Below are positions 16,031 through 60,896 of a DNA stretch of 64,000 nucleotides, one piece after another. Under the pieces are notes generated by a model. The model searched no databases. It was not told the DNA's origin and was given only the letters and a program-made list of their open reading frames with translations. This DNA is from Piromyces finnis finn (lineage: Eukaryota; Fungi; Neocallimastigomycota), in the NCBI GenBank assembly GCA_002104945.1, contig MCFH01000013.1, positions 1-64,000 of the forward strand. Direction: 5' to 3'. The position numbers and the translations under genes were made by a program. Numbering within the stretch: the stretch's first letter is position 1; every line of letters begins with the position of its first letter.

Positions 16031-16041
16031 AGCGTTAGTAT
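16031..16041 (-). promoter_or_regulatory. Self-complementary PBS of element B (ATACTAACGCT)
   Basis: Directly follows the 5' LTR. It is the exact reverse complement of the LTR-internal site at 16315-16325. Confidence 0.85.
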
Positions 16042-16662
16042 TGTAAAAGGTTTATTATAATATTAGTTAATAGGTTATTAAATTAGTTAATTAAGTTAGT
16101 TATTACCTCTCTATACGAGTTAATAACTAAATAAAGTTTTATAAAAAATAATAAAAGAAGGAAAATAAATATTATAACACTAAAATAATATAAACACTTA
16201 TATAAATATTTTATGAAATAACTTTTACTTAAATAATTATATTTTAATTATATCTTTTATTTATTAATTATAATTATCTACATTAATTATTATTATAGTT
16301 ATTAATTTACTTTAATACTAACGCTAAAGTATTTAACGTTAGTTTTTACTATACTTTTAACTATATGAGTTTATTTTCTTTACCACTTGATTGGGTAAAG
16401 CAAATAAACTTCCTATTTAATTAATAACCATTAATATATGGTTATGCATATATTTGGCCAATAAATGGTGACCAGAATATATGGTTTCAATTGAAATATT
16501 TGTGGGCAAACTTATGGCCACAAATATTTCTTACAAATACTAGAAATAACTAAATTGTCTTAGTGGTTAGTAGCTAAAACTTTGAGTCTGAATGACACTA
16601 GTTCGAGACCTCATAGATACTATTTTAAAAAAATTATAATTTTATTTTATTTTATTTTTTTA

Positions 16663-19600
16663 TGATTAAATATTATTATTATAATATTTTATATAACACC
16701 AACACTTTATAAATAAATATTTGTATAATATGTATATATATTATTTTATATTTATTTATTATTATTTATTTATTAATATTTGTTATTAATATTTATTATT
16801 ATTTAATACAAGTTATTTAATAATGTCTTTTCTTATATTATGAAAAGAACTACATTTTAATAATAGTAAAAAATATATATTTATATAATATTAAATAAAA
16901 TTATACTTTTCATATAATTAATTTAATTAATACATAAAAATTTAAATAATATATAATTATATAATTAATTAATAGTAAATAAAATATAAAATTATTTCAT
17001 TATAATTTTAACATTCTCCCAAAAGTATAAATACTTTTATTTAATATTCATTTAATATTCATTTAATATTCATTTAATATTTATGTAATAAATTATTTCT
17101 AAAAATAGACATTTTTGTAGCATCCAAATATTTTGGTGAAACCATCAGCAATGTTATTTAAGGACTTGATATATTCCAATTTAATTTTTTTCTCTTTTAA
17201 CCATTTCTCTTATTTTATGATACTTAATATCAATATGTTTTGATTTTGGATTAATAGTATCATTTTCAGCATTATAAATTGCTGCCTGGTTGTCAATGTT
17301 TATTACAGTACATTTATGAGTTATCCCTAACTCATTAAGTATGTTTGCATACCAAAGTGAATGTTTTCCGCACTCACATAAGCTGTAATATTCTGACTCA
17401 GCTGTAGAGGTAGCAATACAATGTTGAAGTTTCGAAAACCAACTCGTGGGACCACTTCCCATGAAGAAAACAAATCCGGTGGTTGATCTTCTGGTTACTT
17501 TGTCACTACCGTAGTCTGCGTCTACAAAGGTCTTTAAAGAAGCTTCGCCTGAATAGAGCAATCCGTAATTAATGGTTCCTTTGAGGTATTTAAAAATTTG
17601 AATAACATTCTCCCAGTCTTTAAAAGTAGGTTCTTGTGATTTTCTGGCTGCTTTGGTGACTGAAAATAAAATGTCTGGTCTAGTAGATATAGCAAGATAT
17701 AGTAAACTACCAATGGCTGCACGATACTTTGTTGGGTTATATTTTTCTTGTTTATCATCAACTTCGTTTGCTGGTTTAGGTGTTTTGCAAGGTTTACAGT
17801 TTTCTAAGTTGAATTTTCTTAAGATATCTCTAAGGTATCTTTCTTGGTGAAGTAAGTATCCATTGTTTAATTTTTCAAATTTAATTCCAATAATAAAATC
17901 TGCATATCCAATATCGGTAACTTTGTATCTTTTCTTTAGTAATTCTTTAGTTTTATTTATTTCATAATTGTTACCTGATATTAGGATATCATCGACATAT
18001 ATTCCTAACAAACATTTTATATTATTGTTATCATCTTTCTTAACGAAAATACAGGGTTCACTTACCAGTCTTTTAAATCCAATATTAGTTAAAGTATCAG
18101 TTATATTATTATTCCATTCTCGTGCTGCTTGCTTGAGACCATAGAGTGCCTTATTTAGTTTCCAATAGCCTTTTTTCGGTAAGTAGAGTCTCCTTCTGGA
18201 GCATACATATAAATACATTCATTTAAGTCAGCATATAAATAAGCTGCCTTTATATCTAATTGATGTATATAAAATTTCTTTTCTGCTGAAATAGCTGTAA
18301 GAATTCTTAGTGAATCATGTTTTAATGTTGGAGAAAATGTTTCTTTGTAGTCCGTACCGTATTCTTGAGTGAATCCTCTAGCTACTAAGCGTGCTTTATA
18401 CTTGGTAATGTTTCCTTTGCTATCCTTTTAATTTTGAACACCCATTTTGAGGTAATTACATTAGTATTTTGTGGAACTTTGTTTATTTTTTCATATACTT
18501 TGCGTTCTTTCATATTGTTTAATTCATCATTTATAGCGTCAAGCCATCTTCTTTTATCTTTTCTCTTAAAGATTTTCAAAAAAACTTGTTGGTTCTGTTA
18601 TTTGGTTATCTGTCGTTGATGATTTATCAACGTTTATTTATTTCTTTTCTTATTCTTTTACTAGTTGTATACTTTTCATTATTATCCAAAATTTTTCTTT
18701 TGTTCCTTGGATAATTTGGATATTGTCTTTGTTCTACATCTAGTGAATGGTTTGGAATATAGCTTAATGAGTTATTATTTTTTTTTGTTTATTTTATTTA
18801 ATTCTGATAAACTAATTCCATTGTCCAAGTCTTTAGCCTTATAAGAAATTTTGTTCTTAGATTTTCTTTCGCTTTCAATTATTTTTATTTATCCTTTCTT
18901 CTTTGTTTAAGAATTTATTTCTTTTAATTTTAATTTTACTTTCATCTTCACTTTCTTCGTCACTGTCGATTACTTTTTCTTTTATTTTTCTTTTTATGAA
19001 TATTATTATTGTTGTTTTTAATTTTATAACTGTTATTGTCTTTCATATTATTAATGAAGTTATTATTTATATTATTATTTATATTATTCTTATTATGTGA
19101 ATTAATAATATTAACGTTGTTATCGTCATTATTATCATTAAATTTATTTATATGATTTTATTTATAATATCATTATCATCATATATTTCATTAATATTTT
19201 TATTTGTTTTATTTAAATTATTATCTTCTTTTGTATTATTATTTTTATTTTTTATTTTATTTTTATTTTTTATTTTATTTTTATTTAAATCATTACTTTC
19301 ATTTGAATTATTATTTTCATCTGAAATATTGTTTTTATTGGATTATCGTTTTCATTTGAATTATTGTTTTTATTTGAATTGTTATTTTCATTTAAATTAT
19401 TATTTTCATTTAAATTATTATTTGTGTTTAAATCGTTATTTTCTTTTAAAATATTATTTTCATTTAATTTATTTTCATTTAATTGTTATTTATATTTAAA
19501 TTGTTATTTATATTTAAATTGTTATTTTCATTTATGTTATAATTTTTAATGTTTTCTTTATTATTATTGTTATAAATAATATTATCCTTATTATTATTAC

Positions 19601-22450
19601 TATTAATGCCGATATAGTTATTGTTGGCATTATATTTTATTTTATTAAAATTATTTGGAAAATCATTGTTATTAATGTTTGATGATATGCCAATTTCTAT
19701 GTCCTGTTGAAGACTTCGTTATCGTCCCCCTCCATTTCATTGATTAATGAATCATGATCGATGAAATTGACATTTTTGACGTTATCATCAAAATTAAAAT
19801 TACCTGGTTGGTCTTCTAAAAATTCAACTACTCTTTTGATGACAATTTTAAAAGAATTTAAGTCAAAATTCTGAATCCGGTAGAAGTGTCATCATAACCA
19901 ATAAATATGCCAGGTAGCGAAGTGCTTTCAAATTTGTGTTTTTCAGTGTTACGTTTAAGATGTAACACTTTACATCCAAAAACACGAAATTTACTGTAGT
20001 CTACTGGGATATTATATAACATTTCATAGGGTACTTCAAGTCATTTCCATTGTGAGGTAACCTGTTATGTATATAATTGGCAGTTCTGACTGCGTCTTCC
20101 CAGAATCTTCTACATAATTTAGCATCTTGCATCATAGTGGTAGCTGCATGGATTAGTACTCCATTAAACCTTTCAGCGCGTCCATTTTGTTGTGGATTAT
20201 ATGGTACAGTGAATTGTTGTGTAATACCATGAGTATCACAAAAATTTTTAAAATTTAAAGACTTATATTCTGTACCATTATCACTTCTTAAATATGTAAT
20301 ATTCTTTTTAAATTCATTGGTAACTTTATTATACCATATTTTAAACGCGTTTAACGCGTCACTTTTATTTTTTATAAAAATTACCCATCCATATCTTGAA
20401 TATCATCTAAAAAGGTAATAAAATAATGATTACCGTATATAGATGACGCGTTAATGGGTCCAACTATATCAGTATGTACTAATTGAAGTACTTCTGTACT
20501 TTTATTAGTAGAACTATGATATGGTTGATTTTTTAATTTTGATAATGAACATGTTTCACAAATATCTTTAATGTTTATATTAATAATTTATTTTCAATAC
20601 TTTTGGCATGAAAATGACCTAATCTTCTATGCCAAAGATGTAATTTTTCATCATTATTAACTTCCTAATTGAATAACAATACATTGGATTTTGTATTTGG
20701 TAGTTAAATAATTTTGTCTTTGATATATAAACATTAAATATGTTATGTTCATCTTCTCTTGATACATATATATTATTTTTATTTTTATCTTGGATAAATG
20801 CTGTGGCAGATTATTTATATATTTAAATTTACATTAAGACTTCTTTAACAAAATTTGAAATAGATATTAAATTCCTTTTAATATCTGGAACATATAAAAC
20901 ATTTTTTAAAATTATTTGTTCTTTATTAAAGTAGCCTTTTATGTTGCCTATATGTGTAGATAACCAACTCACCATCCGCATAGTAAATTGGTTCTTTATG
21001 TCTTTTAATTTTATATAATAATTTAATATCGTTTGTAAGGTGAACTGATGCTCCTGAATCTAGCATCCACATACTAAAGTTCCCTTTTGATTTTATAACC
21101 TTTTTATATTTTTTATTTGAAAAATTTACTTTTACAACACTGTTTGATTCTTTTTCATATGTAGAATCATAATCCACGTTGAATAAATTTGGTGTTATAT
21201 CCTTGTAGTTACTTCTTTGTTTTGTAACTACATCTGCATATTTCTTTTATATTTTTTATTTTGTTTATTTTATAATTTTTATTGTTTGAATTATATTCTT
21301 TTGCTAATTTTCTTTAAATATGCAGTTTCTTCAATGTGGCCTCTTTTATTACAAAAATGACATATTATCATTTTTATTTTTATTATTTTTATTTTTATAA
21401 TTTGAAATTTATTATTTTTATGATTATAATTATCATAATTTCCATAGCCACTTTCACTACTAAAACTTGATTAAATCCAAGCCTATTACTTCGTTCCCTT
21501 TCTTCTGACCTTTGAACAGACTGAACTCTATTTGATACATATTCTCTACATAAAGTCCAGTTACCTTCATAATCGAATATATTTATCCATTGGTATTGTT
21601 TTGGCATAGCTCTGTATAAAACGGCGGCCTTTTCTTCTTCATCTATATGGACTCCCATGGATTCTAATGTTTCAAATTTTAAATTTAGTTTTAATTTACA
21701 AAACTGGCTATACTATCTTGTGGGTTGTATTTCATTCTATTCACTTCTTTAATAAGGTCAGTTTTCTTACTGGATTGGTTTCCTATATATATACTTTCTA
21801 AAGTTTTCCATATTTGGTAACCAGTAAGTGTTCTACTTTGAACATTCTTCAACTGATTTTGGTGCCAATGTACTTCTAATAAACATTCTTACTTATTATC
21901 AATAGCAAGAGTTTCATCTGTTACATTTTATTATAGTACATGTTAGGCTCATGTGGGACTTCTTTTATAATTTTCTTTTTCACTCTCTGATATATTCTTT
22001 ATATATATCTTTGGAGTTTTATTTTCATCAATATATTCTTCCAAACCGCAGCATCTTAAATATCTCTGACTTTGATCTGCCAAGCTTGAAATTTTCTTTA
22101 TTAAGTTCTATTTTGGAATTTTCCTATAAAACTAGAAGGGTCCATATTTGAACTTAGTAGATTTTTATTTTTATTATTAGACATTTTTTGAGACAATTGA
22201 GACTCTTAATCTTTTATGATTAAATATTATTATTATAATATTTTATATAACACCAACACTTTATAAATAAATAATTTTATAATATGTATTATATTAAATA
22301 TTTTATATTTATTTATTAATTATTTATTTATTAATTTTTTTATTAATTATTTATTATTATTTAATACAAGTTATTTAATAATGTTTTTCTTATATTATGA
22401 AAAGAATACATTTTAATAATAGTAAAAAATATATATTAATATTTATAATA
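16663..22450 (-). mobile_element. Ty1/Copia element K, left arm of palindrome (many indels)
   Basis: 3' LTR 16663-17013 (TGTTAA...TAATCA), PPT TTTTGGGAGAA, RT (YVDD)/RNase H ORF 17181-18218, LDSGAS protease, and partial 5' LTR from 22217. Confidence 0.93.
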
Positions 22451-22593
22451 ATTAACTATAATAAAAATATTAATAAATAAATAAATAATAAATAAAATAT
22501 TAAATAATTATATACATATTTAACAAATATTTATTTATAAAGTTTTTGGTGTTATAATAAATATTATAATAATAATAAAAAATTTATCATAAA

Positions 22594-22608
22594 AGATTAA
22601 GAGTCTCA
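22594..22608 (+). promoter_or_regulatory. Putative half-tRNA PBS of Copia K (complement of tRNA-Lys CUU anticodon arm)
   Basis: AGATTAAGAGTCTCA starts 4 nt after the LTR end. Its complement TGAGA-CT-CTT-AA-TCT has anticodon-loop architecture. It is also present at 22198-22212. Confidence 0.65.
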
Positions 22609-22662
22609 GTTGTCTCAAGAAAATGTCTAATAATAAAAATAAAAAATCTACTAAGTTCAAAT

Positions 22663-27680: not shown

Positions 27681-28172
27681 GCTACAAAAATGTCTATTTT
27701 TAGAAATAATTTATTACATAAATATTAAATGAATATTAAATGAATATTAAATGAATATTAATAAAAGTATTTATACTTTTGGGAGAATGTTAAAATTATA
27801 ATGAATAATTTTATATTTTATTTACTATTAATTAATTATATAATTATATATTATTTAAATTTTTATGTATTAATTAAATTAATTATATGAAAAGTATAAT
27901 TTTATTTAATATTATATAAATATATATTTTTACTATTATTAAATGTAGTTCTTTTCATAATATAAGAAAAGACATTATTAAATAACTTGTATTAAATAAT
28001 AATAAATATTAATAACAAATATTAATAAATAAATAATAATAAATAAATATAAAATAATATATATACATATTATACAAATATTTATTTATAAAGTGTTGGT
28101 GTTATATAAATATTATAATAATAATATTTAATCATAAAAAAAATAAAATAAATAAAATTATATTTTTTAAAA

Positions 28173-28295: not shown

Positions 28296-28741
28296 CTACC
28301 ATATATTCTGGTCACCATTTATTGGCCAAATATATGCATAACCATATATTAATGGTTATTAATTAAATAGGAAGTCTATTTGCTTTACCCAATCAAGTGG
28401 TAAAGAAAATAAACTCATATAGTTAAATAGTATAGTCAAAACTAACGTTAAATACTTTAGCGTTAGTATTAAAGTAAATTAATAGCTATAATAATAATTA
28501 ATGTATATAATTATAACTAATAAATAAAAGATAATAATTATAATAATTATTTAAGTAAATAATATTTCATATTAATATTTATCGTATTATATTTATTTTT
28601 GTGTTATAATATTTATTTTAGTTCTTTTATTATTTTTTATAAAACTTTATTTAGTTATTAACTCGTATAGAGAGGTAATAACTAACTTAATTAACTTGTT
28701 ATATTTAACTTTTTAACTAACATATATAAAAACCTTTTACA

Positions 28742-28752
28742 ATACTAACGCT
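28742..28752 (+). promoter_or_regulatory. Self-complementary PBS of element C (ATACTAACGCT)
   Basis: Exact reverse complement of AGCGTTAGTAT at 28459-28469 in the same LTR. Confidence 0.85.
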
Positions 28753-29042
28753 TTATAGTTAGTTCTTACGTTAGCTTAGTTTTAATTAGGTTAGTGTTAT
28801 TAAAAATTCTTAAAAAACATATTTTATTTTATTTAAATTATTGTTTAATAATAATTATTTACAATATTTTATATAATATTCAAATATTATATTTAAAAGA
28901 AGTAAATTTATTATTAAAAATAATTATTTTTTAATAGTTTAGCATTAAAAATTCATTATTTGTAAATTTTAAAATTCATTATAACCATATTTTATATAAT
29001 AAATTCTTTAATTTATTAAAAGAATTTATTTTCGAATTAGAA

Positions 29043-34628: not shown

Positions 34629-35143
34629 GTTTTCTCCTCAGGGGGGCATTGTAAGAAATATTTGTGGCCATAAGTTTGCCCACAAATATTTCAATTGAAA
34701 CCATATATTCTGGTCACCATTTATTGGCCAAATATATGCATAACCATATATTAATGGTTATTAATTAAATAGGAAGTCTATTTGCTTTACCCAATCAAGT
34801 GGTAAAGAAAATAAACTCATATAGTTAAATAGTATAGTCAAAACTAACGTTAAATACTTTAGCGTTAGTATTAAAGTAAATTAATAGCTATAATAATAAT
34901 TAATGTATATAATTATAACTAATAAATAAAAGATAATAATTATAATAATTATTTAAGTAAATAATATTTCATATTAATATTTATCGTATTATATTTATTT
35001 TTGTGTTATAATATTTATTTTAGTTCTTTTATTATTTTTTATAAAACTTTATTTAGTTATTAACTCGTATAGAGAGGTAATAACTAACTTAATTAACTTG
35101 TTATATTTAACTTATTAACTAACATATATAAAAACCTTTTACA

Positions 35144-36912: not shown

Positions 36913-37909
36913 TGTGAAAATATTAACTGGATTTAAAACAAATTCAGATAATATCTATAATTAATTAAACATAATAATTAGAATTAAATAATCCCAATAA
37001 TTATTTTAAAACACCTTTAAAAGTCACCTTTTAAATTCTGATTCAGTGAAAGGGTTATGATTTCAAAAAATTTAATATCAATACACTATAACCCTTAACC
37101 AAAAATAAACAAATACGAAACTACGCATAACTCGCCAAAAACGAGTGCTACGGCTGTAAGTATTACGGTTGTGAAACCAAGTTTATTAGAAAGCTTAAGG
37201 AAAAAGCTACATTTTGGTACAATCGCGGTCCTTCTAACTGGTCATTTAAGGAAGATATGATCATTTGAAGATTTTAATAAGTAAATTAAAATTAATATGA
37301 TATCAAGTATGGATCATAGACATTTCTTATGACTTGACGAAAATTAAAAAGATATCAATAGAAATTCTAATTATATTAATTTAATTAATGATAGTGACTG
37401 TTACTAAAAATAGAACTAAACCATTTAGGTGTAACAGTTAACATTTATAAATTAAATAATTTTAATTATTATAAAATAGGTTAATGGATCAAGTGTTTAA
37501 ATGATTAATCATATGTTTATTTTATTTTATGTCATGACAAAACAAACAAACAAACAAACAAACAATCTTATTATATTATTAACATATTACATGTAATACT
37601 TTATTTTTATCAATTTAATAATCTGAACAAAGAATATAAAATAGAATGAATTGAATTCGATTTTAATTCTTTGTAAAGATTATAGTTATAATCTTAATTA
37701 TATAGTTATTAAATATATTATCATTTATATTATTATTAATAAATAAATAAAATTTTATAAAAAAGTTATTTTAAAGAATAAATATTAATTTCTCATTTGG
37801 AAGTTTAAAGGGTTATTTTATATTTAAATTTAATTTCTCAAAAAACATATTTACTATATAATTGATAACATTCTGACCTGGCCGCATAACCAAATCCAAA
37901 AACTTAACA
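36913..37909 (+). repeat. Solo-like D-family LTR without TSD
   Basis: Reverse complement of the F LTRs (TGTGAA...TTAACA). Flanks TTAAT and TCATC differ, and no PBS or PPT is adjacent. Confidence 0.9.
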
Positions 37910-44380: not shown

Positions 44381-45995
44381 TGTTAAGTTTTGGGGTTTGG
44401 TTATGCGGCCAGGTCAGAATGTTATTAATTATATAGTAAATATGTTTTTTAAGAAATTAAATTTAAATGTACAATAACACTTTAAACTTCCAAATGAAAA
44501 ATTAATATTTATTTTTTTTTTTGAATAACTTTTTATAAAATTTTATTTATTTAGTAATAATAATATAAATGATAATATATTTAATAACTATATAATTAAG
44601 ATTATAACTATAATCTTTACAAAGAATTAAAATCGAATTCAAATCATTCTATTTTATATTCTTTGTTCAGATTATTAAATTGATAAAAATAAAGTATTAC
44701 ATGTAATATGTTAATAATATAATTAAATAAGTAATAAGATTGTTTGTTTGTTTGTTTGTTTGTTTGTTTGTCATGACATAAAAATAAAATAAACATATGA
44801 TTAATCATTTAAACACTTGATCCATTAACCTATTTTATAATAATTAGAATTATTTAATTTATAAATGTTAACTGTTACACCTAAATGGTTTAGTTCTATT
44901 TTTAGTAACAGTCACTATCATTAATTAAATTAATATAATTAAAATTTCTATTGATATATTTTTAATTTTCGTCAAGTCATAAGAAATGTCTATGATCCAT
45001 ACTTGATATCATATTAATTTTAATTTACTTATTAAAATCTTTAAATGATCATATCTTCCTTAAATGACCAGTTAGAAGGACCGCGATTGTACCAAAATGT
45101 AGCTTTTTCCTTAAGCTTTCTAATAAACTTGGTTTCACAACCGTAATACTTACAGCCTTAGCGTTCGTTTTTGGCGAGTTACACCTTGTTTCGTGTTTGT
45201 TTATTTTTGGTTAAGGGTTATAGTGTATTGATATTAAATTTTTTGAAATCATAACCCTTTCACTGAACCAAAATTTAAAAGGTGACTTTTAAAGGTGTTT
45301 TAAAATAATTATTGGGATTATTTAATTCTAATTATTATGTTTAATTAATTATAGATATTATCTGAATTTGTTTTAAATCCAGTTAATATCTTGTAAAGAT
45401 ATCAAACGCCTCTGTTTGATATCTTTAATGTAACTTAAGCCACAAGTATTATTGTTTAAGTTACACAAATTATATTCAGAAAAAGAAAATGAGACATAAT
45501 TTATTTATTAATAATTAAAGTTTAAAACAAAATAAATTATTAATTTATTTTTAATGTTTAACAAGTAAATTAATATTCTCAATTTAAATCCCTAGTTTTA
45601 GTATTGTTTTTTTATAGAAATAGATAAATAATAAATGATTAATATATCAATAATACATGGGCACATATTCAAATTAAATGGTACTTAATTTGAATTGCCA
45701 ATTGTATTTTACTAAAAATAGTTATAGTTTAAATATTTATTAATAATTAAGATTTTAGTGTAGATTTTAAATAATAATATATAAGAAATAAATAGTTATA
45801 ATATAATATAAATGTATTTAGGAAAAATATAAATAGAAGATATTTTTCATCATTTTATCGATGTAATTGTTATTAATAAAATTTCTATTATAATAAAAGA
45901 TATTTTTAATAAAACAATTTTTTATTTTATTTTAAATTTTGTGTTATTGTAATAGAATAGATATCCTAATCTATTCTTTCTGTGTCAGCATTACA

Positions 45996-46006
45996 ATAAC
46001 AATTAC
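45996..46006 (+). promoter_or_regulatory. Self-complementary PBS of element E (ATAACAATTAC)
   Basis: Exact reverse complement of GTAATTGTTAT at 45863-45873 in the same LTR. Confidence 0.85.
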
Positions 46007-46140: not shown

Positions 46141-46150
46141 CTAGCAGAAG

Positions 46151-46186
<36 letters not shown>

Positions 46187-46297
46187 ACTCTGATTAATAT
46201 TATTATTATATAATACAAAACTTGTTCGACACTGTATAACAGATCGAGTTTGAATAACTTTTGTATTAACTAACATCGTTTTTGTAGAAATAGTTTT

Positions 46298-46341
<44 letters not shown>

Positions 46342-46397
46342 ACTTACTTGAAACAGTAGTAAGAAAACATTTTTTATATTTTGTTTTATATTTAACG

Positions 46398-49300
46398 TTG
46401 GAGGACTTAATTAGTGAGTTTGAAAATTTAAATTTAGAGATGGGTGATAGGACTGTGGGTGTTTCTGGGAATTCGGGGAACATTATTAATGCTCCACCGA
46501 TATTTTCTGGTAAACAAAGAGAATTGGATGGATTTTTAACCAGAGTTGAGTTGGTATTTCGTACTCGACCGACACTGTATAATACAGATCGAGTCAAGGT
46601 CGACTTCGTTATATCATACTTCTCTGGTAAACCTTTGGAATGGGCTTCAGTGTTGATGAAGAATAATAGTGGGGTTTTAAACCATTATGATGAATTTGTA
46701 GATAGGTTGAAGGCTAATTTTGGCAGTTATAGATACGATACCGTTGTAGCTAACGGTAAATTAGATAATCTTCGCCAAAGGAAACTTGGTCAGGTATTAG
46801 ATTACATTACCGAGTTTCAACGTATTAGCCAAAATTCAAGCTTTAATGACAGCGCAAAAATCTACATGTTTCTGAAAGGTTTATTACCACCACTTAGGGA
46901 GAAGTTGGCTTTCATTGAATCAAACCCAACTTCAATTGAACAATTGATTTCTTCAACTATTTTAGTTGAAGATATGATGAAAAGGAATTCTCTAAGTGAA
47001 TTTTATTTTAATGGTAGAAGGGCTAACGATCCTATGGATGTGGATGTATTTAGAATTAGTAGAGAAAATAAACGCAAAAGGTATGTGAATATCCAAGGAT
47101 CAAGTAAAAATTACAATGAAAACATAGACAACTTTGAAGAAGAAAAGAAAAAGGGGTTATGTTTTCTTTGTAAACAACCAGGACATTTAAAATTTAATTG
47201 TCCTAATAGAGTAAAGCCCAGAAAAGTGTTAAGAATTGTGAAAGAAAGGACTCCAAAAATTGTTAATCCAAAAATTTACAAAGTTGGAGTCAAGGGAGTG
47301 AAAAGTGATTTAAACCTTGTGGATTTTTACTTGAGTACCAATGAAGTTTCGGAAGTTAAAATTAAGGTTTTAATTGATTCCGGTTCTGAATTAAATTTCA
47401 TTAATCCAAGTCTTGCTGAAGAACTTGGTATTAATTTGGAAAAAGTGGAACCATTCCGTGTTTCAGGTGTTAGTGATGGAGTTGTTAGTGTTTGGGAAAG
47501 GACTGAGAAGTGCATGCTCCGTTGCAAAAATCACTTCGAAGTAATTCAACTTTATGGATTACAAGTCCCCGGTGTTGATGTTATTCTTGGTTTGCCGTGG
47601 ATAAAGAAGCATAATCCAAATGCTTTCTACGACTCTAAGAAAATCGCTTTTAGTTCTGGTTATTGTGCCAGACACTGTAACAAAGGTAAAAGAAAAAGAA
47701 AACCAAGAAAGAAGTCCAAGAATGATCAATTAGATCATGATGTTCTCGACCGAAGCTTAACCAAAAAACCGAAAGTAGATTCCTCCGTCCCAAACCATGA
47801 AGAAAAAGAATATGTTAAAGGCCGCCTTGTTAGAACCATTAATGATGAAGATGACAGCGATGATGAATATATTAGTTTTAATAAAAAAGTTAAATGTATT
47901 GTAACGAAAATTAATGAAACATGTAATAATGATAATGAATCATGTAGTAATAATAATAATGAAAAGAATATTAATAAAGATAAATTGGTCGCCGTACCAA
48001 CCCAATATTTAGAATTTAGTGAAGTGTTTAACGAAAAAAATTGTGAAGTGTTACCTCCTCATAGACCTTATGATTGTGAAATCAAACTTAAGGATGATTC
48101 AACTTTATTTTATGGACCCTTGTATCCATTAACTGAAGTTGAAAGAGAGGAACTTAAAAAGTATATAGATGAAAATTTAAATAAAGGTTTTATTAGGAAA
48201 TCATCGTCTCCTGCTGGTGCCCCAATTTTGTTTGTTAAAAAGAAGGACGGTTCCTTAAGACTTTGTATTGATTATAGAAGGTTGAATAATATTACCATTC
48301 GTAATTCATATCCTTTACCTTTAATAAGTGACCTTTTGGATAGGGTGAAAAATGCTAAGATTTTTACCAAATTAGACCTTAAATCCGCTTATAATCTTGT
48401 TCGTATTAAAGAAGGTGACGAATACAAAACGGCTTTTCGTACTAGGTATGGTCATTTTGAATATCTGGTTATGCCTTTTGGATTAAAGAATGCACCTGCA
48501 ACTTTTCAACACTTCATTAACGATGTCCTTAGTGACTATTTAGACGATTTTGTTATCTCATATATTGATGATATTCTTATTTATTCTAATAATATCGAAG
48601 AACATCATGAGCATGTTAAAAAGGTACTTAAGAAACTACTTGAAAATAATCTTTATGTTAAATTAGAAAAATGTGAGTTTGATGTTGAGAAAACCACTTT
48701 TCTTGGTTATGTCATTTCAAAGGATGGATTGCAAATGGATGAAAATAAAGTTAAAGCAATTCTCGATTGGCCGGTTCCCAAGAATGTTAAAGAGGTTCAG
48801 TCTTTTATTGGTTTATGCAACTATTACAGAATTTTTATTAAAGACTTTGCTAAAATTGCAAACCCTCTTCACAAACTCACTAGAAAGAATGTTGCTTTTA
48901 ACTGGGTGAAAGAAGATCAGGACGCTTTTATTTTATTAAAATCTCTGTTCACGTCAGCTCCTATTCTGAAACATGCGGATAGTAATAAACAATTTATTGT
49001 AGAAACTGATGCTAGTAATTATGCTGTCGGTGCTATTCTCTCTCAAGAATTTGATGGCAAATTACATCCTATTGCATTTCTTTCTAAAAGTTTGACGAGT
49101 TGTCAAAGAAACTATCCTATATATGACAAGGAACTTTTAGCTATTGTAGTTGCTCTTGAAGAATGGCGTCATTATTTAGAAGGTGCACGCCATCCGTTCA
49201 TAATTTATACTGATCACAAGAATTTAACATTTCCTAGAAAACCTGAAATGTTATCTCAGAGACAAATTAGATGGAATTTGTTCTTATCCAGATTTGATTT

Positions 49301-50987
49301 TAAACTCATTTATAGAGCTGGAAAGAAATCCGGTAAGCCTGATATCCTGTCTCGTAGAAGTGACCATTTAGAGAATAATATTAATTCTGATGTTTCTTGT
49401 CTTACTATTTCGTTTCATCATAGCGATAACAAACCGTTAATCGATTCTATTTTATTAGAACTTAAAAATGACGATTTGTATAATTCTATTGTCCAATTTA
49501 AAATGAATGGTTCTGCATGTAATGCACCTATTAAAAATATTGATAAAGTTATTATTGATAACGAAGGATTTTTGTTATATAATAATCTTATTTATGTTCC
49601 TAAATCTCTTAGGACAAGAGTTTTGGAACTTCATCATGATTCTGTTGCTGCTGGTCATTTCGGTATTAAGAAAACCACTGAACTGATTTCCAGAAACTTT
49701 TGGTGGCCAAGGTTTCATTCAGACGTTAAATCTTTTATCAAATCTTGCGTGACTTGTTGCAAATCCAAAGTCCCCAGACATAAGCCTTATGGATTGTTAT
49801 CCCCTTTGGACACTCCCAGTAGGCCCTGGTCTGATATTTCTATTGATTTTATTGTTGATCTTCCTAAGTCCAGAGATATGACAACTCTCATGGTTGTTGT
49901 CGATAGATTTACTAAATTTGCTCACGCCATTCCTTTACGTTGTCTTCCTACTGCTTCGATTGCTGCTGATGCTTTTATTGCTAATGTCTTCCGTTTGCAT
50001 GGTCTTCCTGATTCCATCATTTCTGATAGAGGCTCGCAATTTACTTCTGACTTTTGGTCAAGACTTTGTGACCTTCTTAATATCAATCATTCATTGTCAA
50101 CTGCTAACCATCCGCAGACAGATGGTCAAACGGAGAGGGTGAACGGCATATTAGAACAATATTTCCGTTGTTTTATCAATAAAAAGCAGAATAACTGGGT
50201 TGATCTTATCCCGTTTGCTGAATTTGCTTATAATAATACTTTACAGCAATCTATAAATCAATCCCCATTCTTTGCTAATTATGGTTTTCATCCAAAGTTC
50301 AGCTTGGAAATCCCGGCTAATGATAGACCTAGTAGAGCTGAACAAAGAGTAATTGATATGAATGAAAACTTTAAATTATTAAAAGAAAACTTAGAAAAAG
50401 CAAAAGAAACATATAAGAAATATGCCGATATGAAGAGAATGATTCCCCCGGAGTTCGAAGTGGGAAAGAAGGTATGGTTATTGAAAGATTCTCCTGGAAC
50501 TAACCTAAAGAGAAAATTAGCACCTCAAATGCTTGGCCCATTTGAGATAATTGAAAAAGTTAGTTCTCTCGCTTTCAAATTGAAACTTCCAAAGACAATG
50601 AGATGTCATCCAGTCTTTCATGTTTCATTGTTAGAACCATACTTTGAAAACAAGTTTAACGACAGGTCTAATCGTAGGAAGAGGAACGTTCACCTTAACA
50701 CAGATTTAATTGAAAAAATTCCAGAGAAAATTGAAAAGATGAAATCTGTTAATGGTGAAACATTTTATAAGTTATCATGGAAAGGATTTGACAAATCCAC
50801 TTGGATTTCTGAAGATCAGATTCCAGATAAACAATTAATACAAGAGTTTGAAAGAAACTCTAAAAAGTCAAAATATAAGTCGAACGACTCCTCCATGAAA
50901 ATTAGAAAGAATAAAGTTAGTAATCTAATCAAGCACAGATACCAACCATTTGTAATTGAAATTCCTTCGAGAAAAGATTCCTTATAA
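46398..50987 (+). CDS. pol: Element E gag-pol polyprotein (gag, CCHC, PR, RT, RNase H, IN, chromodomain-like)
   Basis: Uninterrupted 1529-codon ORF: CFLCKQPGHLKFNC, LIDSGS, YIDD, TDAS, HHCC, SDRG and FYKLSWKGF. The first codon is TTG; the first ATG is at 46440. Confidence 0.96.
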   Translation: MEDLISEFENLNLEMGDRTVGVSGNSGNIINAPPIFSGKQRELDGFLTRVELVFRTRPTLYNTDRVKVDFVISYFSGKPLEWASVLMKNNSGVLNHYDEFVDRLKANFGSYRYDTVVANGKLDNLRQRKLGQVLDYITEFQRISQNSSFNDSAKIYMFLKGLLPPLREKLAFIESNPTSIEQLISSTILVEDMMKRNSLSEFYFNGRRANDPMDVDVFRISRENKRKRYVNIQGSSKNYNENIDNFEEEKKKGLCFLCKQPGHLKFNCPNRVKPRKVLRIVKERTPKIVNPKIYKVGVKGVKSDLNLVDFYLSTNEVSEVKIKVLIDSGSELNFINPSLAEELGINLEKVEPFRVSGVSDGVVSVWERTEKCMLRCKNHFEVIQLYGLQVPGVDVILGLPWIKKHNPNAFYDSKKIAFSSGYCARHCNKGKRKRKPRKKSKNDQLDHDVLDRSLTKKPKVDSSVPNHEEKEYVKGRLVRTINDEDDSDDEYISFNKKVKCIVTKINETCNNDNESCSNNNNEKNINKDKLVAVPTQYLEFSEVFNEKNCEVLPPHRPYDCEIKLKDDSTLFYGPLYPLTEVEREELKKYIDENLNKGFIRKSSSPAGAPILFVKKKDGSLRLCIDYRRLNNITIRNSYPLPLISDLLDRVKNAKIFTKLDLKSAYNLVRIKEGDEYKTAFRTRYGHFEYLVMPFGLKNAPATFQHFINDVLSDYLDDFVISYIDDILIYSNNIEEHHEHVKKVLKKLLENNLYVKLEKCEFDVEKTTFLGYVISKDGLQMDENKVKAILDWPVPKNVKEVQSFIGLCNYYRIFIKDFAKIANPLHKLTRKNVAFNWVKEDQDAFILLKSLFTSAPILKHADSNKQFIVETDASNYAVGAILSQEFDGKLHPIAFLSKSLTSCQRNYPIYDKELLAIVVALEEWRHYLEGARHPFIIYTDHKNLTFPRKPEMLSQRQIRWNLFLSRFDFKLIYRAGKKSGKPDILSRRSDHLENNINSDVSCLTISFHHSDNKPLIDSILLELKNDDLYNSIVQFKMNGSACNAPIKNIDKVIIDNEGFLLYNNLIYVPKSLRTRVLELHHDSVAAGHFGIKKTTELISRNFWWPRFHSDVKSFIKSCVTCCKSKVPRHKPYGLLSPLDTPSRPWSDISIDFIVDLPKSRDMTTLMVVVDRFTKFAHAIPLRCLPTASIAADAFIANVFRLHGLPDSIISDRGSQFTSDFWSRLCDLLNINHSLSTANHPQTDGQTERVNGILEQYFRCFINKKQNNWVDLIPFAEFAYNNTLQQSINQSPFFANYGFHPKFSLEIPANDRPSRAEQRVIDMNENFKLLKENLEKAKETYKKYADMKRMIPPEFEVGKKVWLLKDSPGTNLKRKLAPQMLGPFEIIEKVSSLAFKLKLPKTMRCHPVFHVSLLEPYFENKFNDRSNRRKRNVHLNTDLIEKIPEKIEKMKSVNGETFYKLSWKGFDKSTWISEDQIPDKQLIQEFERNSKKSKYKSNDSSMKIRKNKVSNLIKHRYQPFVIEIPSRKDSL

Positions 50988-52032
50988 ATTAATCTCGCAG
51001 GAGCTCGACTTAGAGAGAGAGATTGTAAAGATATCAAACGCCTCTGTTTGATATCTTTAATGTAACTTAAGCCACAAGTATTATTGTTTAAGTTACACAA
51101 ATTATATTCAGAAAAAGAAAATGAGACATAATTTATTTATTAATAATTAAAGTTTAAAACAAAATAAATTATTAATTTATTTTTAATGTTTAACAAGTAA
51201 ATTAATATTCTCAATTTAAATCCCTAGTTTTAGTATTGTTTTTTTATAGAAATAGATAAATAATAAATGATTAATATATCAATAATACATGGGCACATAT
51301 TCAAATTAAATGGTACTTAATTTGAATTGCCAATTGTATTTTACTAAAAATAGTTATAGTTTAAATATTTATTAATAATTAAGATTTTAGTGTAGATTTT
51401 AAATAATAATATATAAGAAATAAATAGTTATAATATAATATAAATGTATTTAGGAAAAATATAAATAGAAGATATTTTTCATCATTTTATCGATGTAATT
51501 GTTATTAATAAAATTTCTATTATAATAAAAGATATTTTTAATAAAACAATTTTTTATTTTATTTTAAATTTTGTGTTATTGTAATAGAATAGATATCCTA
51601 ATCTATTCTTTCTGTGTCAGCATTACATATCTTCACAACGCCCTCCCTAGGAATTCGTATTCCAGACGAATTCTAGAAACTGGAGCGAGAAATAAAAATT
51701 TTTGATTTTAAAAAATTTTTACGAGAGGAATAATTTCAAAAGGTCACTTGGCCATTGTGAGATTTTTGAAATTTCACTTTTTGAAAAATTTCTTTGTTGA
51801 TAAAATTTTAATAATAAAATTGATAAAGTAAGATTTAAAAATGATAATAGAAATAAAAAAAATTAAGTTTTAATATAATAATTGAAAAATATTAAAAGTA
51901 AAAATTTTGAAATGTTGAAATTTCAAAATTTTGTGATGAGTTAAATTTCGAAATTTAGTTGTTATAAAAATTTTTTGTAATTGTTGTAAAAGTTATTTTT
52001 AGAGAATTATTGACTTATTAATATAGTAATAA

Positions 52033-56896: not shown

Positions 56897-56907
56897 GTAA
56901 AGATTAT
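56897..56907 (-). promoter_or_regulatory. Self-complementary PBS of element F (ATAATCTTTAC)
   Basis: Directly follows the 5' LTR and is the exact complement of the LTR-internal site at 57133-57143. Confidence 0.85.
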
Positions 56908-57937
56908 TGTTAAGTTTTTGGATTTGGTTATGCGGCCAGGTCAGAATGTTAGCAATTATATAGTAAATATGTTTTTAAGAAATTAAATTTAAATATAAAA
57001 TAACCCTTTAAACTTCCAAATGAGAAATTAATATTTATTCTTTAGAATAACTTTTTTATAAAATTTTATTTATTTATTAATAATAATATAAATGATAATA
57101 TATTTAATAACTATATAATTAAAATTATAACTATAATCTTTACAAAGAATTAAAATCAAATTCAATTCATTCTATTTTATATTCTTTGTTCAGATTATTA
57201 AATTGATAAAAATAAAGTATTACATGTAATATGTTAATAATATAATTAAATAAGTAATAAGATTGTTTGTTTGTTTGTTTGTTTGTTTGTTTGTTTTGTC
57301 ATGACATAAAATAAAATAAACATATGATTAATCATTTAAACACTTGATCCATTAACCTATTTTATAATAATTAAAATTATTTAATTTATTTAATTTATAA
57401 ATGTTAACTGTTACACCTAAATGGTTTAGTTCTATTTTTAGTAACAGTCACTATCATTAATTAAATTAATATAATTAGAATTTCTATTGATATCTTTTTA
57501 ATTTTCGTCAAGTCATAAGAAATGTCTATGATCCATACTTGATATCATATTAATTTTAATTTACTTATTAAAATCTTTAAATGATCATATCTTCCTTAGA
57601 TAACCAGTTAGAAGGACCGCGATTGTACCAAAATATAGCTTTTCCCTTAAGCTTTCTAATAAACTTGGTTTCACAACCGTAATACTTACAGCCGTAGCAC
57701 TCGTTTTTGGCGAGTTATGCGTAGTTTCGTATTTGTTTATTTTTGGCTAAGGGTTATAGTGTATTGATATTAAATTTTTTGAAATCATAACCCTTTCACT
57801 GAACCAAAATTTAAAAGGTGACTTTTAAAGGTGTTTTAAAATAATTATTGGGATTATTTAATTCTAATTATTATGTTTAATTAATTATAGATATTATCTG
57901 AATTTGTTTTAAATCCAGTTAATATCTTCACATCGTG

Positions 57938-59071: not shown

Positions 59072-60207
59072 TGTTAAGTTTTTGGGTTTGGTTATGCGGC
59101 CAGGTCAGAATGTTATTAATTATATAGTAAAAATGTTTTTTAAGAAATTAAATTTAATTATAAAGTAACACCTTAAACTCCCAAATGAAAAATGAAAAAT
59201 TTATATTTACTTTAAAATAACTTTTTATAAATTTTTTATTTATTTAATAATAATAATATAAATGATATTATAAGTAACTATATAATTAAGATTATAACTA
59301 TAATCTTTACAAAGAATTAAAATCGAATTCAATTCATTCTCTTTTATATTCTTTGTTCAGATTATTAAATTGATATTAATAAGAATAAAGTATTACATGT
59401 AATATATTAGTAATATAATTAAATAAGTAATAAGATTGTTTGTTTGTTTGTTTGTTTGTTTGTCATGACATAAAATAAAATAAACATATGATTAATCATT
59501 TAAACAGTTGATCCTAATTAGTAATTATAAAAACTATTCAATTAATAATTCATCATTATTAATTGATATTACCATAACATATTTGTTATAATTAAATAAT
59601 TATTATTTGCAAAATTATTTCTAATAAAACTTGCCGTTAACCTATTTTATAATAATTAAGATTATTTAATTTATAGGTGTTAACTGTTACACCTAAATGG
59701 GTCTAGTTCTATTTTTAGTAACAATCGTTATCATTAATTAAATTAATATAACTAAAATTCCTATTGATATATTTTTAATTTCATCAAGTCATAAGAAATA
59801 TTTATGATCCATACTTGATATCATATTAATTTTAATTTACCTAATAAAATCTTTAAATGATCATAACTTCCTTAAATGATCAGTTAGAAGGACCGCGATT
59901 GTACCAAATTGTAGCTTTCTTCCTAAGCTTTCCAATAAACCTAGTTTCATCACCGTAGTACTTATAGCCGTAGCGATCGTTTTTGGCGAGTTACACCTTA
60001 TTTCGTACTTGCTTATTTTTGGTTAAGGGTTATAGTATATTGATATTAAATTTTTGAAATCATAACCCTTTCACTGAATCAAAATTTAAAAGGTGACTTT
60101 TAAAAGTGTTTTAAAATAATTATTGAAATTATTTAATTATAATTATTATGTTTAATTAATTATAGATATTATCTGAATTTGTTTTAAATCCAGTTAATAT
60201 CTTCACA
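59072..60207 (-). repeat. Solo D-family LTR with 5-bp TSD TTGTG
   Basis: Homologous to the F LTRs, with ~120 bp extra near 59510-59635. TTGTG at 59067-59071 and 60208-60212. (TTTG)n microsatellite inside. Confidence 0.92.
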
Positions 60208-60258
60208 TTGTGTTTATTCAGCTAGTTTTTATTATGTTTTTATGGGAGTAGCGTATCA
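60208..60258 (-). repeat. Terminal remnant of an older A-family LTR
   Basis: TTGTGTTTATTCAGCTAGTTTTTATTATGTTTTTATGGGAGTAGCGTATCA matches 9635-9685 with four substitutions. Confidence 0.85.
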
Positions 60259-60885
60259 AAAAATAATGTCACAATAACATATATAAAAATTTAAAAAATT
60301 TGGACACATGGAAAAAATTAAAAATTTTTTCAAAATTTGAAAATTTGAAAATTTGAAAAAATTTATTTTTTAAATTTTTATTAAAAAATTTCAAAGTATA
60401 AAATTTCTAATATTTGAAATTATTAAATTTTTTAAAATTATTAAAATTTTATTATTAAAAATTTTATTTTAAATTTATTAACTATTTACAATAATTATAT
60501 TAATTATTAATTTATAAAAATTAAATATTTTATAATTAGATAATAATTAATTAAAATTAAAAAATGTAATAATTAAAATTGTTCATGTATAAAAAGAACA
60601 AAAATTGACAAAAATTACGAAGCTTTAGCGTTAGTAATTTTTTAACTTAAAGTTAATAAAATTTATAAACTTCTATAAAACCTAAAACTTTAAAAATTTT
60701 AATATTTTTAATAACTTAATATATGCTGATATTAAGTTATTGCTAAAATAAAAATATTATTTAATTTTCTTTATATAAATATTATTAGCTTTACGCCTTC
60801 AATAGGAAAGCGTATTATATTTGTTAATTAATATAACTAGTGTGCTTACCACACTTTTCTTTAATAAAAAAATCGCTTTTTGACA

Positions 60886-60896
60886 TTACTAACGCT
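60886..60896 (+). promoter_or_regulatory. Self-complementary PBS of element L (TTACTAACGCT)
   Basis: Exact reverse complement of AGCGTTAGTAA at 60627-60637 in the same LTR. Confidence 0.85.

What the first reader, a model, noticed from the sequence alone, without database searches (positions are those of the whole stretch)
16031..60896. Four co-resident Gypsy families share an 11-nt Tf1-style self-priming architecture
Seen: B/C, E, F and L all lack a TGG-starting tRNA PBS. In each, the 11 nt directly after the 5' LTR are exactly complementary to one site inside the LTR, and pairing stops after 11 nt on the PBS-distal side: ATACTAACGCT, ATAACAATTAC, ATAATCTTTAC and TTACTAACGCT. TATAAA-like boxes lie 35-39 nt upstream of that site in E, F and L. 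Known: S. pombe Tf1 primes from the first 11 nt of its own mRNA after RNase H cleavage, and similar structures were predicted for other Tf1/sushi-group elements. Inference: a diversified self-priming radiation in this host, with three unrelated primer sequences but invariant length.
Basis: partly seen in the sequence, partly recalled or inferred. Interest (0 to 1): 0.82.

Follow-up and report, generated by a model that had tools for sequence, protein, structure and literature searches.

The report
Self-priming Gypsy retrotransposons, four families
Four families of jumping genes in this very AT-rich, probably gut-fungal, DNA appear to start copying themselves with a short piece of their own RNA instead of a host tRNA, a trick already known from the fission-yeast element Tf1, so this is a clean new example rather than a new mechanism.

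Summary
In B/C, E, F and L the 11 nt directly after the 5' LTR are exactly complementary to one site inside that LTR. Pairing stops on the PBS-distal side, and none of the four PBSs starts with TGG. Chance per family is 5e-5 to 2.5e-3, and a fifth Gypsy family in the window (A) shows nothing. A TATA box lies 35-39 nt upstream of the site in E, F and L, and in all seven relatives examined.

Relatives at 64-75% protein identity, from gut-type metagenomes, keep the pairing through compensated changes on both sides. This argues strongly for Tf1-style self-priming and against a fixed host tRNA.

Two sub-claims are overstated:
- The primers are not unrelated. E and F share 8 of 11 bases, and B/C and L differ by one compensated base.
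- The length is not invariant in the wider clade, where it is 10, 11, 12 or 16 nt.

All are Ty3/Gypsy elements. On a reference-poor tree they fall in one clade of Orpinomyces and gut-metagenome sequences, sister to fish elements that I take to be sushi-like. Self-priming is long established for the Tf1/sushi group, so these are new members of a known kind. The transcription start and the RNase H cut remain untested.

The parts
16042..16536 (-). Element B 5' LTR (495 nt). The self-primer site AGCGTTAGTAT is at 16325->16315.
   Evidence: LTR pair 98% identical; boundaries and site read; pattern hits.
16031..16041 (-). Element B PBS ATACTAACGCT, directly after the LTR end ...TTTTACA.
   Evidence: shuffle frequency 2.5e-4.
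9694..10189 (-). Element B 3' LTR, with a second copy of the site at 9977->9967. The B interior is 10190-16030. Its pol is broken by a frameshift in RT.
28298..28741 (+). Element C 5' LTR. It lacks the first 51 nt compared with its 3' LTR. Site at 28459-28469.
28742..28752 (+). Element C PBS ATACTAACGCT.
34649..35143 (+). Element C 3' LTR, with the site at 34861-34871. The C pol carries an in-frame stop in RT.
45392..45995 (+). Element E 5' LTR (604 nt). TATAAAT is at 45828-45834 and the site GTAATTGTTAT at 45863-45873. The 5' arm of a U5 hairpin is at 45942-45953.
   Evidence: LTRs 100% identical; TSD TATCT at 45387-45391 and 51628-51632; TATA position; hairpin.
45996..46006 (+). Element E PBS ATAACAATTAC.
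   Evidence: in the folded leader all 11 primer-PBS pairs are in the MFE structure, mean pair probability 0.78.
46398..50987 (+). Element E single intact ORF of 1529 aa: gag, PR, RT, RNase H, IN, SH3_Tf2-1 and a marginal chromodomain.
   Evidence: Pfam scans; closest solved structure is the Ty3 Gag-Pol polyprotein, E = 1e-156.
51024..51627 (+). Element E 3' LTR, with the site at 51495-51505.
56908..57932 (-). Element F 5' LTR (1025 nt). The TATA box starts at 57181 and the site GTAAAGATTAT is at 57143->57133.
56897..56907 (-). Element F PBS ATAATCTTTAC. The gag ATG follows about 25 nt further on.
   Evidence: primer-PBS pair probability 0.98.
44381..45391 (-). Element F 3' LTR, main part, with the site at 44620->44610. 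Its first 5 nt lie at 51637-51633, on the far side of the nested element E, followed there by the TSD copy at 51632-51628.
36913..37909 (+). F-family LTR copy with no PBS after it (solo or truncated). The site is intact at 37673-37683.
59072..60207 (-). A further F-family LTR copy with no PBS after it. The site is intact at 59310->59300.
60267..60885 (+). Element L 5' LTR. Its start is inferred from TGTCA...TGACA ends only. TATAAAA is at 60588-60594 and the site AGCGTTAGTAA at 60627-60637.
60886..60896 (+). Element L PBS TTACTAACGCT.
   Evidence: shuffle frequency 5e-5.
60967..63999 (+). Element L gag-PR-RT reading frame. It is open from the first ATG to the end of the window.

Best explanation
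B/C, E, F and L are Ty3/Gypsy LTR retrotransposons that most likely prime minus-strand DNA synthesis with the 5' end of their own transcript, as Tf1 does.

Proposed steps:
1. Transcription starts about 35-39 nt downstream of a TATA box in the LTR, at the first base of the 11-nt site (inferred).
2. The first 11 nt of the RNA fold back onto the PBS, which directly follows the LTR. The complementarity is shown; the RNA fold is predicted.
3. The element's RNase H cuts after nt 11, and the freed 3' end is extended through U5 and R (inferred from Tf1).
4. Plus-strand strong-stop synthesis copies the retained primer. The PBS of the next copy is therefore re-templated from the primer, which would explain why primer and PBS change together between relatives (inferred).

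The elements belong to a clade found so far only in Orpinomyces and gut-type metagenomes, so the host is probably an anaerobic gut fungus (Neocallimastigomycota).
For: - Placement and chance: exact 11-nt PBS/LTR complementarity sits at the only place a minus-strand primer can sit, directly after the LTR end, in four families. Chance per family is 5e-5 to 2.5e-3. Gypsy family A in the same window is a negative control.
- No tRNA-type PBS: no PBS starts with TGG, ARAGORN finds no tRNA gene in the window and Rfam finds no RNA family.
- Compensated changes in the B/C-L lineage: the first PBS base changes A to T together with the last site base T to A. L088 (64% identical protein) has PBS ATAGTAACGCT and site AGCGTTACTAT.
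- Compensated changes in the E lineage: L001 and L002 (65% identical) keep the same pair. L003-L005 have GTATTAGTTAT with ATAACTAATAC, which is two compensated changes.
- Compensated changes in the F lineage: L089-L091 have GTAAGGTTAT with ATAACCTTAC. L098 has GTAAGATTAT with ATAATCTTAC, a one-base deletion on both sides.
- TATA boxes start within about -35 to -40 in E, F, L and the seven relatives examined (read by eye for the relatives). TATAWAW density in the LTRs is only 0.4-1.3 per 100 nt.
- Folding: the primer-PBS duplex is in the minimum-energy fold of all five window leaders, with pair probability 0.78-0.98.
- Element type: gag-PR-RT-RH-IN order with the Tf2-1-type SH3 domain. A single gag-pol ORF in E.
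- Phylogeny: the window families sit in a 26-row clade (SH-aLRT 100) next to fish elements whose gag carries the RTL/LDOC-type (PF16297) domain, which I take to be sushi-like.
- Literature: Tf1 uses its first 11 nt, cut between nt 11 and 12 (PMC7175516). Self-priming is attributed to the Tf1/sushi group from fungi to vertebrates (PMC4600332, PMC6317226).
Against: - No RNA or cDNA data exist here, so the transcription start, the cleavage and the primer itself are all inferred.
- B/C lack a good TATA box at the expected distance.
- In relatives L001-L003 and L088 the minimum-energy fold prefers other pairings. In the E lineage a U5 hairpin overlaps the first 5-6 nt of the PBS.
- B, C and F are defective copies, so only E (and L, as far as it can be seen) could be active.
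- No Tf1, sushi-ichi or MAGGY reference sequence could be obtained, so placement in the Tf1/sushi group is indirect.
- The host's tRNA set was not available.
Confidence: 0.85

Rival explanations
1. The PBSs are bound by host tRNAs or tRNA fragments at an internal region or as a half-tRNA, as in some copia-type elements. On this view the match to the LTR is incidental.
For: No host tRNA set was available, so this could not be excluded directly. Half-tRNA priming exists in plant copia lineages (PMC6317226). The window holds no tRNA gene to compare with.
Against: - A host tRNA is constant, yet PBS and LTR site change together in three lineages.
- Four different PBS sequences each match their own LTR perfectly, at chance levels of 5e-5 to 2.5e-3.
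- Pairing ends exactly where a conserved TATA box predicts the RNA 5' end to be.
Confidence: 0.04
2. The LTR-PBS complementarity is a long-range RNA helix used for something other than priming, such as packaging, dimerisation or translational control of gag. On this view priming is done by an unidentified primer.
For: The helix closes the whole R-U5 leader in the predicted folds. In F the gag start codon lies only about 25 nt beyond it.
Against: - Every LTR element needs a primer whose 3' end pairs with the base next to the LTR end, and the helix begins exactly there in all families and relatives.
- No other candidate PBS is present.
- The arrangement matches what was shown experimentally for Tf1 (PMC7175516).
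Confidence: 0.06
3. The matches are chance inverted repeats in very AT-rich, low-complexity LTRs.
For: Inverted repeats of 10-14 nt are frequent in these sequences, with several per kilobase in the relatives.
Against: - The test is position-specific, using the 11 nt directly after the LTR, and gives 5e-5 to 2.5e-3 per family.
- The B/C and L words contain four G/C bases.
- The pairing is kept across relatives with compensated changes, and family A shows none.
Confidence: 0.01
4. Self-priming occurs, but the primer is not the first 11 nt of the transcript. Transcription would start further upstream and the primer would be cut out on both sides, or it would start inside the site and give a shorter primer.
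For: - In the B lineage and in L098 a PBS-identical word lies just upstream of the site, so complementary sequence exists on both sides of the presumed start.
- Duplex length varies from 10 to 16 nt among relatives.
Against: The TATA box keeps a fixed distance of 35-40 nt to the first base of the site across lineages whose primers differ. Complementarity ends abruptly at that base in all window families.
Confidence: 0.08

Closest known systems
Tf1 and Tf2 of Schizosaccharomyces pombe (founding self-primed Ty3/Gypsy elements)
   Same: - No tRNA-type PBS.
- The PBS directly after the 5' LTR is complementary to 11 nt at the presumed 5' end of the transcript.
- The Tf1 PBS begins ATAAC (PMC11042837), as does the E PBS (ATAACAATTAC).
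- E has a single gag-pol ORF, a 5-bp target duplication and a C-terminal chromodomain (marginal score).
   Different: - The host is different and extremely AT-rich.
- Four diverged families (RT-RH-IN 40-47% identical) lie side by side, with different primer words.
- B and F show no detectable chromodomain.
- F-lineage relatives have separate gag and pol ORFs.
- Cleavage and the RNA start are untested here.
Tj1 of Schizosaccharomyces japonicus
   Same: Self-priming was inferred from PBS/5' LTR complementarity in the same way (PMC4600332). Like the F-lineage relatives, it has gag and pol in separate reading units.
   Different: Tj1 was shown to transpose, and it targets Pol III genes. Nothing is known here about activity or target choice.
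Vertebrate Tf1/sushi-group elements (sushi-ichi and relatives)
   Same: - Fish elements whose gag carries the RTL/LDOC-type (PF16297) domain, which I take to be sushi-like, are the sister group of the window's clade in the RT-RH-IN tree (SH-aLRT 95).
- The E gag matches the RTL1-8/LDOC1-type domain PF16297.
- Self-priming has been predicted for this group (PMC4600332, PMC6317226).
   Different: Protein identity is only 34-44% over the long alignments. No named sushi-ichi reference sequence was available for the tree.
Tcn1 clade (Cryptococcus, mosses, lycophytes) and other predicted self-primers in plants
   Same: They are predicted self-primers, detected by LTR complementarity of 10 nt or more starting 0-5 nt after the LTR (PMC6317226).
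   Different: They are different clades and hosts. In the broader fungal relatives sampled here the complement is 8-12 nt and mostly starts 2 nt after the LTR, rather than directly at it.

Membership tests
Self-priming Ty3/Gypsy LTR retrotransposons (Tf1/sushi group) | Ty3/Gypsy gene order gag-PR-RT-RNase H-IN between LTRs | tested here: met
   Pfam domains are in that order in E (one ORF) and in the pieces of B, C and F. The best solved relative is Ty3 Gag-Pol.
Self-priming Ty3/Gypsy LTR retrotransposons (Tf1/sushi group) | No PBS complementary to a tRNA 3' end (TGG...) next to the 5' LTR | tested here: met
   The bases after the LTR ends are ATAC..., ATAA..., ATAA... and TTAC....
Self-priming Ty3/Gypsy LTR retrotransposons (Tf1/sushi group) | The PBS directly after the 5' LTR is complementary to a sequence inside the same LTR | tested here: met
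   There are exact 11-nt complements in all four families. Shuffle frequencies are 5e-5 to 2.5e-3.
Self-priming Ty3/Gypsy LTR retrotransposons (Tf1/sushi group) | Primer and PBS stay complementary when either changes (co-variation among relatives) | tested here: met
   At least six compensated events were seen: B/C versus L; B versus L088; E versus L003 (two); F versus L098 (paired deletion); F versus L089.
Self-priming Ty3/Gypsy LTR retrotransposons (Tf1/sushi group) | The complementary sequence is the very 5' end of the element's mRNA | not testable with these tools
   The only support is indirect: a TATA box at -35 to -40 in E, F, L and seven relatives. No RNA data were available.
Self-priming Ty3/Gypsy LTR retrotransposons (Tf1/sushi group) | RNase H cleavage of the RNA duplex (between nt 11 and 12 in Tf1) releases the primer | not testable with these tools
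   This needs cDNA or RNA mapping. The LTR end fixes where the primer's 3' end must be, which corresponds to nt 11 of the site.
Self-priming Ty3/Gypsy LTR retrotransposons (Tf1/sushi group) | RT/IN phylogeny places the element inside the Tf1/sushi clade | tested here: inconclusive
   The tree of 43 RT-RH-IN rows puts the window's clade next to fish elements taken here to be sushi-like, and away from plant chromoviruses. No Tf1, Tf2, sushi-ichi or MAGGY sequence could be included.
Chromoviruses (chromodomain-bearing Gypsy elements) | Chromodomain at the C-terminus of integrase | tested here: inconclusive
   E scores 25.3 bits against a Pfam cut-off of 25.1, and its relatives carry PF00385. B and F show no chromodomain hit at E <= 1.
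tRNA-primed LTR retrotransposons | PBS complementary to a host tRNA (3' end or internal half) | tested here: not met
   The 3'-end type is excluded by sequence. The internal or half-tRNA type could not be checked against a host tRNA set, but it is contradicted by co-variation of the PBS with the LTR.

The most novel reading that the evidence does not exclude
In this gut-fungal clade the self-primer could be governed by a fixed ruler: a start set by a TATA box at -35 to -39 and an RNase H cut 11 nt further on. Primer identity would then diversify freely, because the PBS is re-copied from the primer in every cycle.

The B lineage, and L098 in the F lineage, would add a third player. This is a PBS-identical word just upstream of the start that co-varies with both primer and PBS. 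It could form a hairpin over the U3/R junction, for instance to mask the 3' copy of the primer sequence or to control initiation. Such an element has not, to my knowledge, been described for self-primed retrotransposons.
Probability: 0.15. Interest if true: 0.55.

Novelty: new member of a known kind. Interest (0 to 1): 0.35.

Why it matters
Self-priming has been shown experimentally for very few elements. Here several diverged families from one fungal clade carry different primer/PBS words, and their relatives carry compensated changes. That makes a natural mutagenesis series:
- It shows which positions are free to vary (the 5' and middle part of the primer) and which are held (the 3' TAT and the PBS start ATA).
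- It shows that duplex length clusters at 10-12 nt but can reach 16.

E has identical LTRs and an intact single ORF, so it is a candidate active element for an organism group that lacks genetic tools. For annotation, PBS-by-tRNA finders will miss or mis-bound these elements in anaerobic gut fungi.

Tried and rejected
- **Intron or programmed frameshift in RT.** B, C and F all have ORF breaks at about the same place in RT. Reading the three frames showed unrelated defects: a frameshift in B, an in-frame stop in C and a small insertion in F. The ORFs end at the same spot only because the conserved YLVMPFG codons contain stops in the other frame. The pieces were always searched separately and never joined.
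- **tRNA next to B.** A tRNA-looking stretch near the B 5' LTR (16555-16625) was not supported by ARAGORN or Rfam.
- **Rfam.** The whole window gave no family at gathering score.
- **RNAalifold on four E-lineage leaders.** MAFFT misaligned the 5' ends, so the long-range helix could not be scored. Only the local U5 hairpin was returned. Co-variation was therefore counted by hand and by script.
- **Metagenome scan with an RT-RH-IN alignment.** It returned only distant relatives (31-40% identity, GC about 0.5). These served as a broad comparison, not for co-variation.
- **Contigs that were too short or truncated.** L087 (site only), L092, L097 and L100-L102 could not show both primer and PBS.
- **IMG/VR scan.** It gave four loci, which were not analysed further.
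- **Reference sequences and papers.** No Tf1 chain came up when E's polyprotein was searched against the PDB sequences. Lin and Levin 1997 and 1998 are not in the held library.
- **Target-site duplications.** None could be recognised for B or F.
- **Searches and steps not done.** The large representative protein search was not used, because the word search and family scans left nothing open. No spliced model was involved.
Full report
**What is in the window**

The window is extremely AT-rich: GC is 0.13-0.42 per 2 kb. It appears to consist almost entirely of nested LTR retrotransposons.

Self-comparison and Pfam scans define these elements:
- Gypsy A, about 246-9686, - strand.
- Gypsy B, 9694-16536, - strand.
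- Two copia copies, about 16652-28139.
- Gypsy C, 28298-35143, + strand, the same family as B.
- A copia element, 36095-43781, which carries an F-family LTR.
- Gypsy F, - strand: 5' LTR 56908-57932, 3' LTR 44381-45391.
- Gypsy E, 45392-51627, + strand, nested ten bases inside the start of the F 3' LTR.
- A further F LTR, 59072-60207.
- Gypsy L, from about 60267 to beyond the window end.

State of the copies:
- E has identical LTRs, a 5-bp target duplication (TATCT) and one intact 1529-aa gag-pol ORF.
- L has an open gag-PR-RT frame up to the window end.
- B, C and F are each broken once in RT, by a frameshift, an in-frame stop and a small insertion respectively.
- Their pieces were always handled apart.

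**Check of the observation**

Each directly follows an LTR end of the form ...ACA, and its exact complement occurs once in that LTR.

| Family | PBS | Site in LTR | Site start to LTR end |
|---|---|---|---|
| B/C | ATACTAACGCT | AGCGTTAGTAT | 284 nt (B), 283 nt (C) |
| E | ATAACAATTAC | GTAATTGTTAT | 133 nt |
| F | ATAATCTTTAC | GTAAAGATTAT | 236 nt |
| L | TTACTAACGCT | AGCGTTAGTAA | 259 nt |

- The next pair on the PBS-distal side is a mismatch in every case.
- On the other side the terminal A of the LTR can also pair in B, C, E and L.
- None of the PBSs starts with TGG.

Chance was tested in a position-specific way. In 20,000 dinucleotide shuffles of each LTR the required word appeared in 0.025% (B, C), 0.25% (E), 0.13% (F) and 0.005% (L). 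Only 0.02-0.3% of each element's internal 11-mers have a complement in their own LTR. Gypsy A, in the same window and of similar composition, has no complement of 8 nt or more after its LTR.

The TATA claim also holds. TATAWAW starts at -35 (E), -38 (F) and -39 (L), although such words occur only 0.4-1.3 times per 100 nt of LTR. B/C have only a degenerate box near -43.

**Relatives and co-variation**

Word searches with the E polyprotein and the L frame found hundreds of relatives:
- Nearly all come from unnamed metagenome contigs, several from gut-type samples.
- Four are gene models of Orpinomyces sp. (JGI Orpsp1_1), at 62-86% identity.
- The host is therefore probably an anaerobic gut fungus. 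This is an inference from relatives, not from a host gene in the window.

I fetched the contigs of relatives and read their LTR/PBS junctions.

E lineage:
- L001 and L002 (65% identical protein) keep GTAATTGTTAT with ATAACAATTAC.
- L003-L005 have GTATTAGTTAT with ATAACTAATAC, two changes compensated on both sides.

B lineage:
- L088 (64% identical) has the same LTR end, CCTTTTACA, followed by ATAGTAACGCT(A).
- Its site is (T)AGCGTTACTAT, so a C-to-G change in the PBS is matched by G-to-C in the site.
- Within the window, B/C and L differ at the first PBS base and the last site base, again compensated.

F lineage:
- L089-L091 (73% identical) have ATAACCTTAC with GTAAGGTTAT.
- L098 has ATAATCTTAC with GTAAGATTAT, which is one base lost on both sides.

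A separate family:
- L099 is sister to the B/L lineage in the tree.
- Its PBS is ATAATCTTATTCTAAA, with a 16-nt complement 331 nt upstream.

In all seven relatives examined, a TATA box lies about 35-40 nt before the first base of the site (positions for the relatives read by eye). A constant host tRNA cannot explain PBS and LTR changing together. A primer taken from the element's own RNA does explain it.

**Mechanism**

This part is inferred, by analogy with Tf1.
1. Transcription would begin at the first base of the site.
2. The first 11 nt would fold back on the PBS.
3. RNase H would cut after nt 11, and the new 3' end would be extended into U5.

For Tf1 the literature states that the first 11 bases pair with the PBS and that RNase H cuts between bases 11 and 12 (PMC7175516).

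Folding the predicted leaders puts all 11 primer-PBS pairs in the minimum-energy structure of B, C, E, F and L, with pair probability 0.78-0.98. It does not do so for L001-L003 or L088, so thermodynamic prediction alone is not decisive.

In retroelements, plus-strand strong-stop synthesis copies the primer. In a self-primed element the PBS is therefore re-templated from the element's own 5' end at each cycle. I propose this as the reason why primer and PBS drift together so readily. It is not shown here.

The primers are not unrelated:
- E and F are identical at 8 of 11 positions (GTAA...TTAT).
- The L099 family and the F lineage share the 3' AAGATTAT.
- All primers end in TAT (TAA in L), and nearly all PBSs begin ATA.
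- The Tf1 PBS also begins ATAAC (PMC11042837), like those of E, L003 and L089.

The length of 11 is common to all four window families and to Tf1. Among relatives, however, the part beyond the LTR end is 10 (L089, L098), 11 (L001-L003), 12 (L088) or 16 nt (L099).

In more distant fungal Gypsy elements from soil and root metagenomes (31-40% identity) with a recognisable LTR pair, I again saw no TGG-type PBS. In several of them there was an 8-12 nt complement, mostly starting 2 nt after the LTR.

**Classification**

All four families have the Ty3/Gypsy order and the Tf2-1-type SH3 domain.
- E also matches the RTL/LDOC-type gag domain and, marginally, a chromodomain.
- B and F show no chromodomain.
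- The families are 57-67% identical in the RT core and 40-47% over RT-RH-IN.

A quick maximum-likelihood tree of 43 RT-RH-IN rows shows:
- E, F and B, plus the L relative P0082, sit in one clade of 26 rows (SH-aLRT 100). That clade consists only of gut-metagenome and Orpinomyces sequences.
- Its sister group consists of fish elements whose gag carries the RTL/LDOC-type (PF16297) domain, which I take to be sushi-like (SH-aLRT 95).
- Plant chromoviruses lie further out.

This fits a radiation within the Tf1/sushi group. The rows were chosen from searches seeded with the window's own proteins, and no Tf1, sushi-ichi or MAGGY sequence could be included. Membership by phylogeny is therefore inconclusive.

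**Novelty**

Self-priming was demonstrated for Tf1. It has been inferred for:
- Tf2 and Tj1;
- vertebrate Tf1/sushi elements and Tcn1;
- about 12% of surveyed plant elements (PMC4600332, PMC6317226, PMC7175516).

A text search found no paper describing LTR-element priming in Neocallimastigomycota. These are therefore new members of a known kind, in a host group where they have not been described. They come with an unusually clear set of compensated changes.

**Side observations**
- In the B lineage and in L098, a word identical to part of the PBS lies 9-18 nt upstream of the site and changes along with the PBS and the site.
- In the E lineage, a 7-12 bp U5 hairpin overlaps the last bases of the LTR and the first 5-6 bases of the PBS.
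- Neither was followed to a function.

Noticed in passing
window 16337-16343 (- strand, B LTR); L087 and L088 just upstream of their sites; L098 about 7118-7125: A word identical to part of the PBS lies 9-18 nt upstream of the self-primer site: ACTAACG in B/C, AGTAACGCT in L087, GTAACGCT in L088 and ATAATCTT in L098. It changes together with the PBS and the site, giving a near-palindrome across the presumed transcription start. Shuffle p is 0.017 down to below 0.001. It is absent from the E lineage, L, F, L089 and L099.
   Followed up: partly
window 45942-45953 with 45990-46001; the same in L001, L002, L003: The E lineage has a U5 hairpin (12 bp in E and L002, 10 bp in L001, 7 bp in L003). Its 3' arm covers the last 6 nt of the LTR and the first 5-6 nt of the PBS, so it competes with the primer-PBS duplex. 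This recalls the U5-IR stem described for Tf1 and retroviruses.
   Followed up: partly
window 45387-45391 and 51628-51632: Element E (identical LTRs, intact ORF) is inserted ten bases into the start of the F 3' LTR, with a 5-bp duplication TATCT. It is a recent insertion and a possibly active copy.
   Followed up: yes
window 13216-13479 and 31313-31640: Tandem repeats with a 45-nt period (4-6 copies, 15 codons each) lie inside the gag-PR reading frames of B and C.
   Followed up: no
window 12720, 32063 and 54489 regions: B, C and F each have one break in RT at nearly the same place. The lesions are unrelated: a frameshift, an in-frame stop and a small insertion. The shared ORF end arises because the conserved YLVMPFG codons read as stops in another frame. 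It is not an intron or a programmed frameshift.
   Followed up: yes
window 16555-16625: A stretch beside the B 5' LTR looks like a decayed tRNA (D-arm and T-arm-like words). ARAGORN and Rfam do not call it.
   Followed up: partly
L001 (period 6019) and L088 (period 6980): These metagenome contigs read interior-LTR-interior. That means either tandem elements sharing one LTR, as reported for integrase-independent Tf1 insertion at PBS homology (PMC11042837), or an assembly artefact of collapsed LTRs.
   Followed up: no
window 246-1075 and 9245-9686: Gypsy family A has two LTR copies head to head at 246-584 and 586-1023, each flanked by its polypurine tract. It shows no self-complementary PBS and no clear TG...CA ends, so its priming mode is unknown.
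   Followed up: partly
L099 212-1439: The contig carrying the 16-nt-primer family also holds a split, intron-containing nucleoside transporter gene (PF01733). These metagenome contigs are therefore eukaryotic, even though some relatives are filed under bacterial bins (for example P0009, labelled Erysipelotrichaceae).
   Followed up: no
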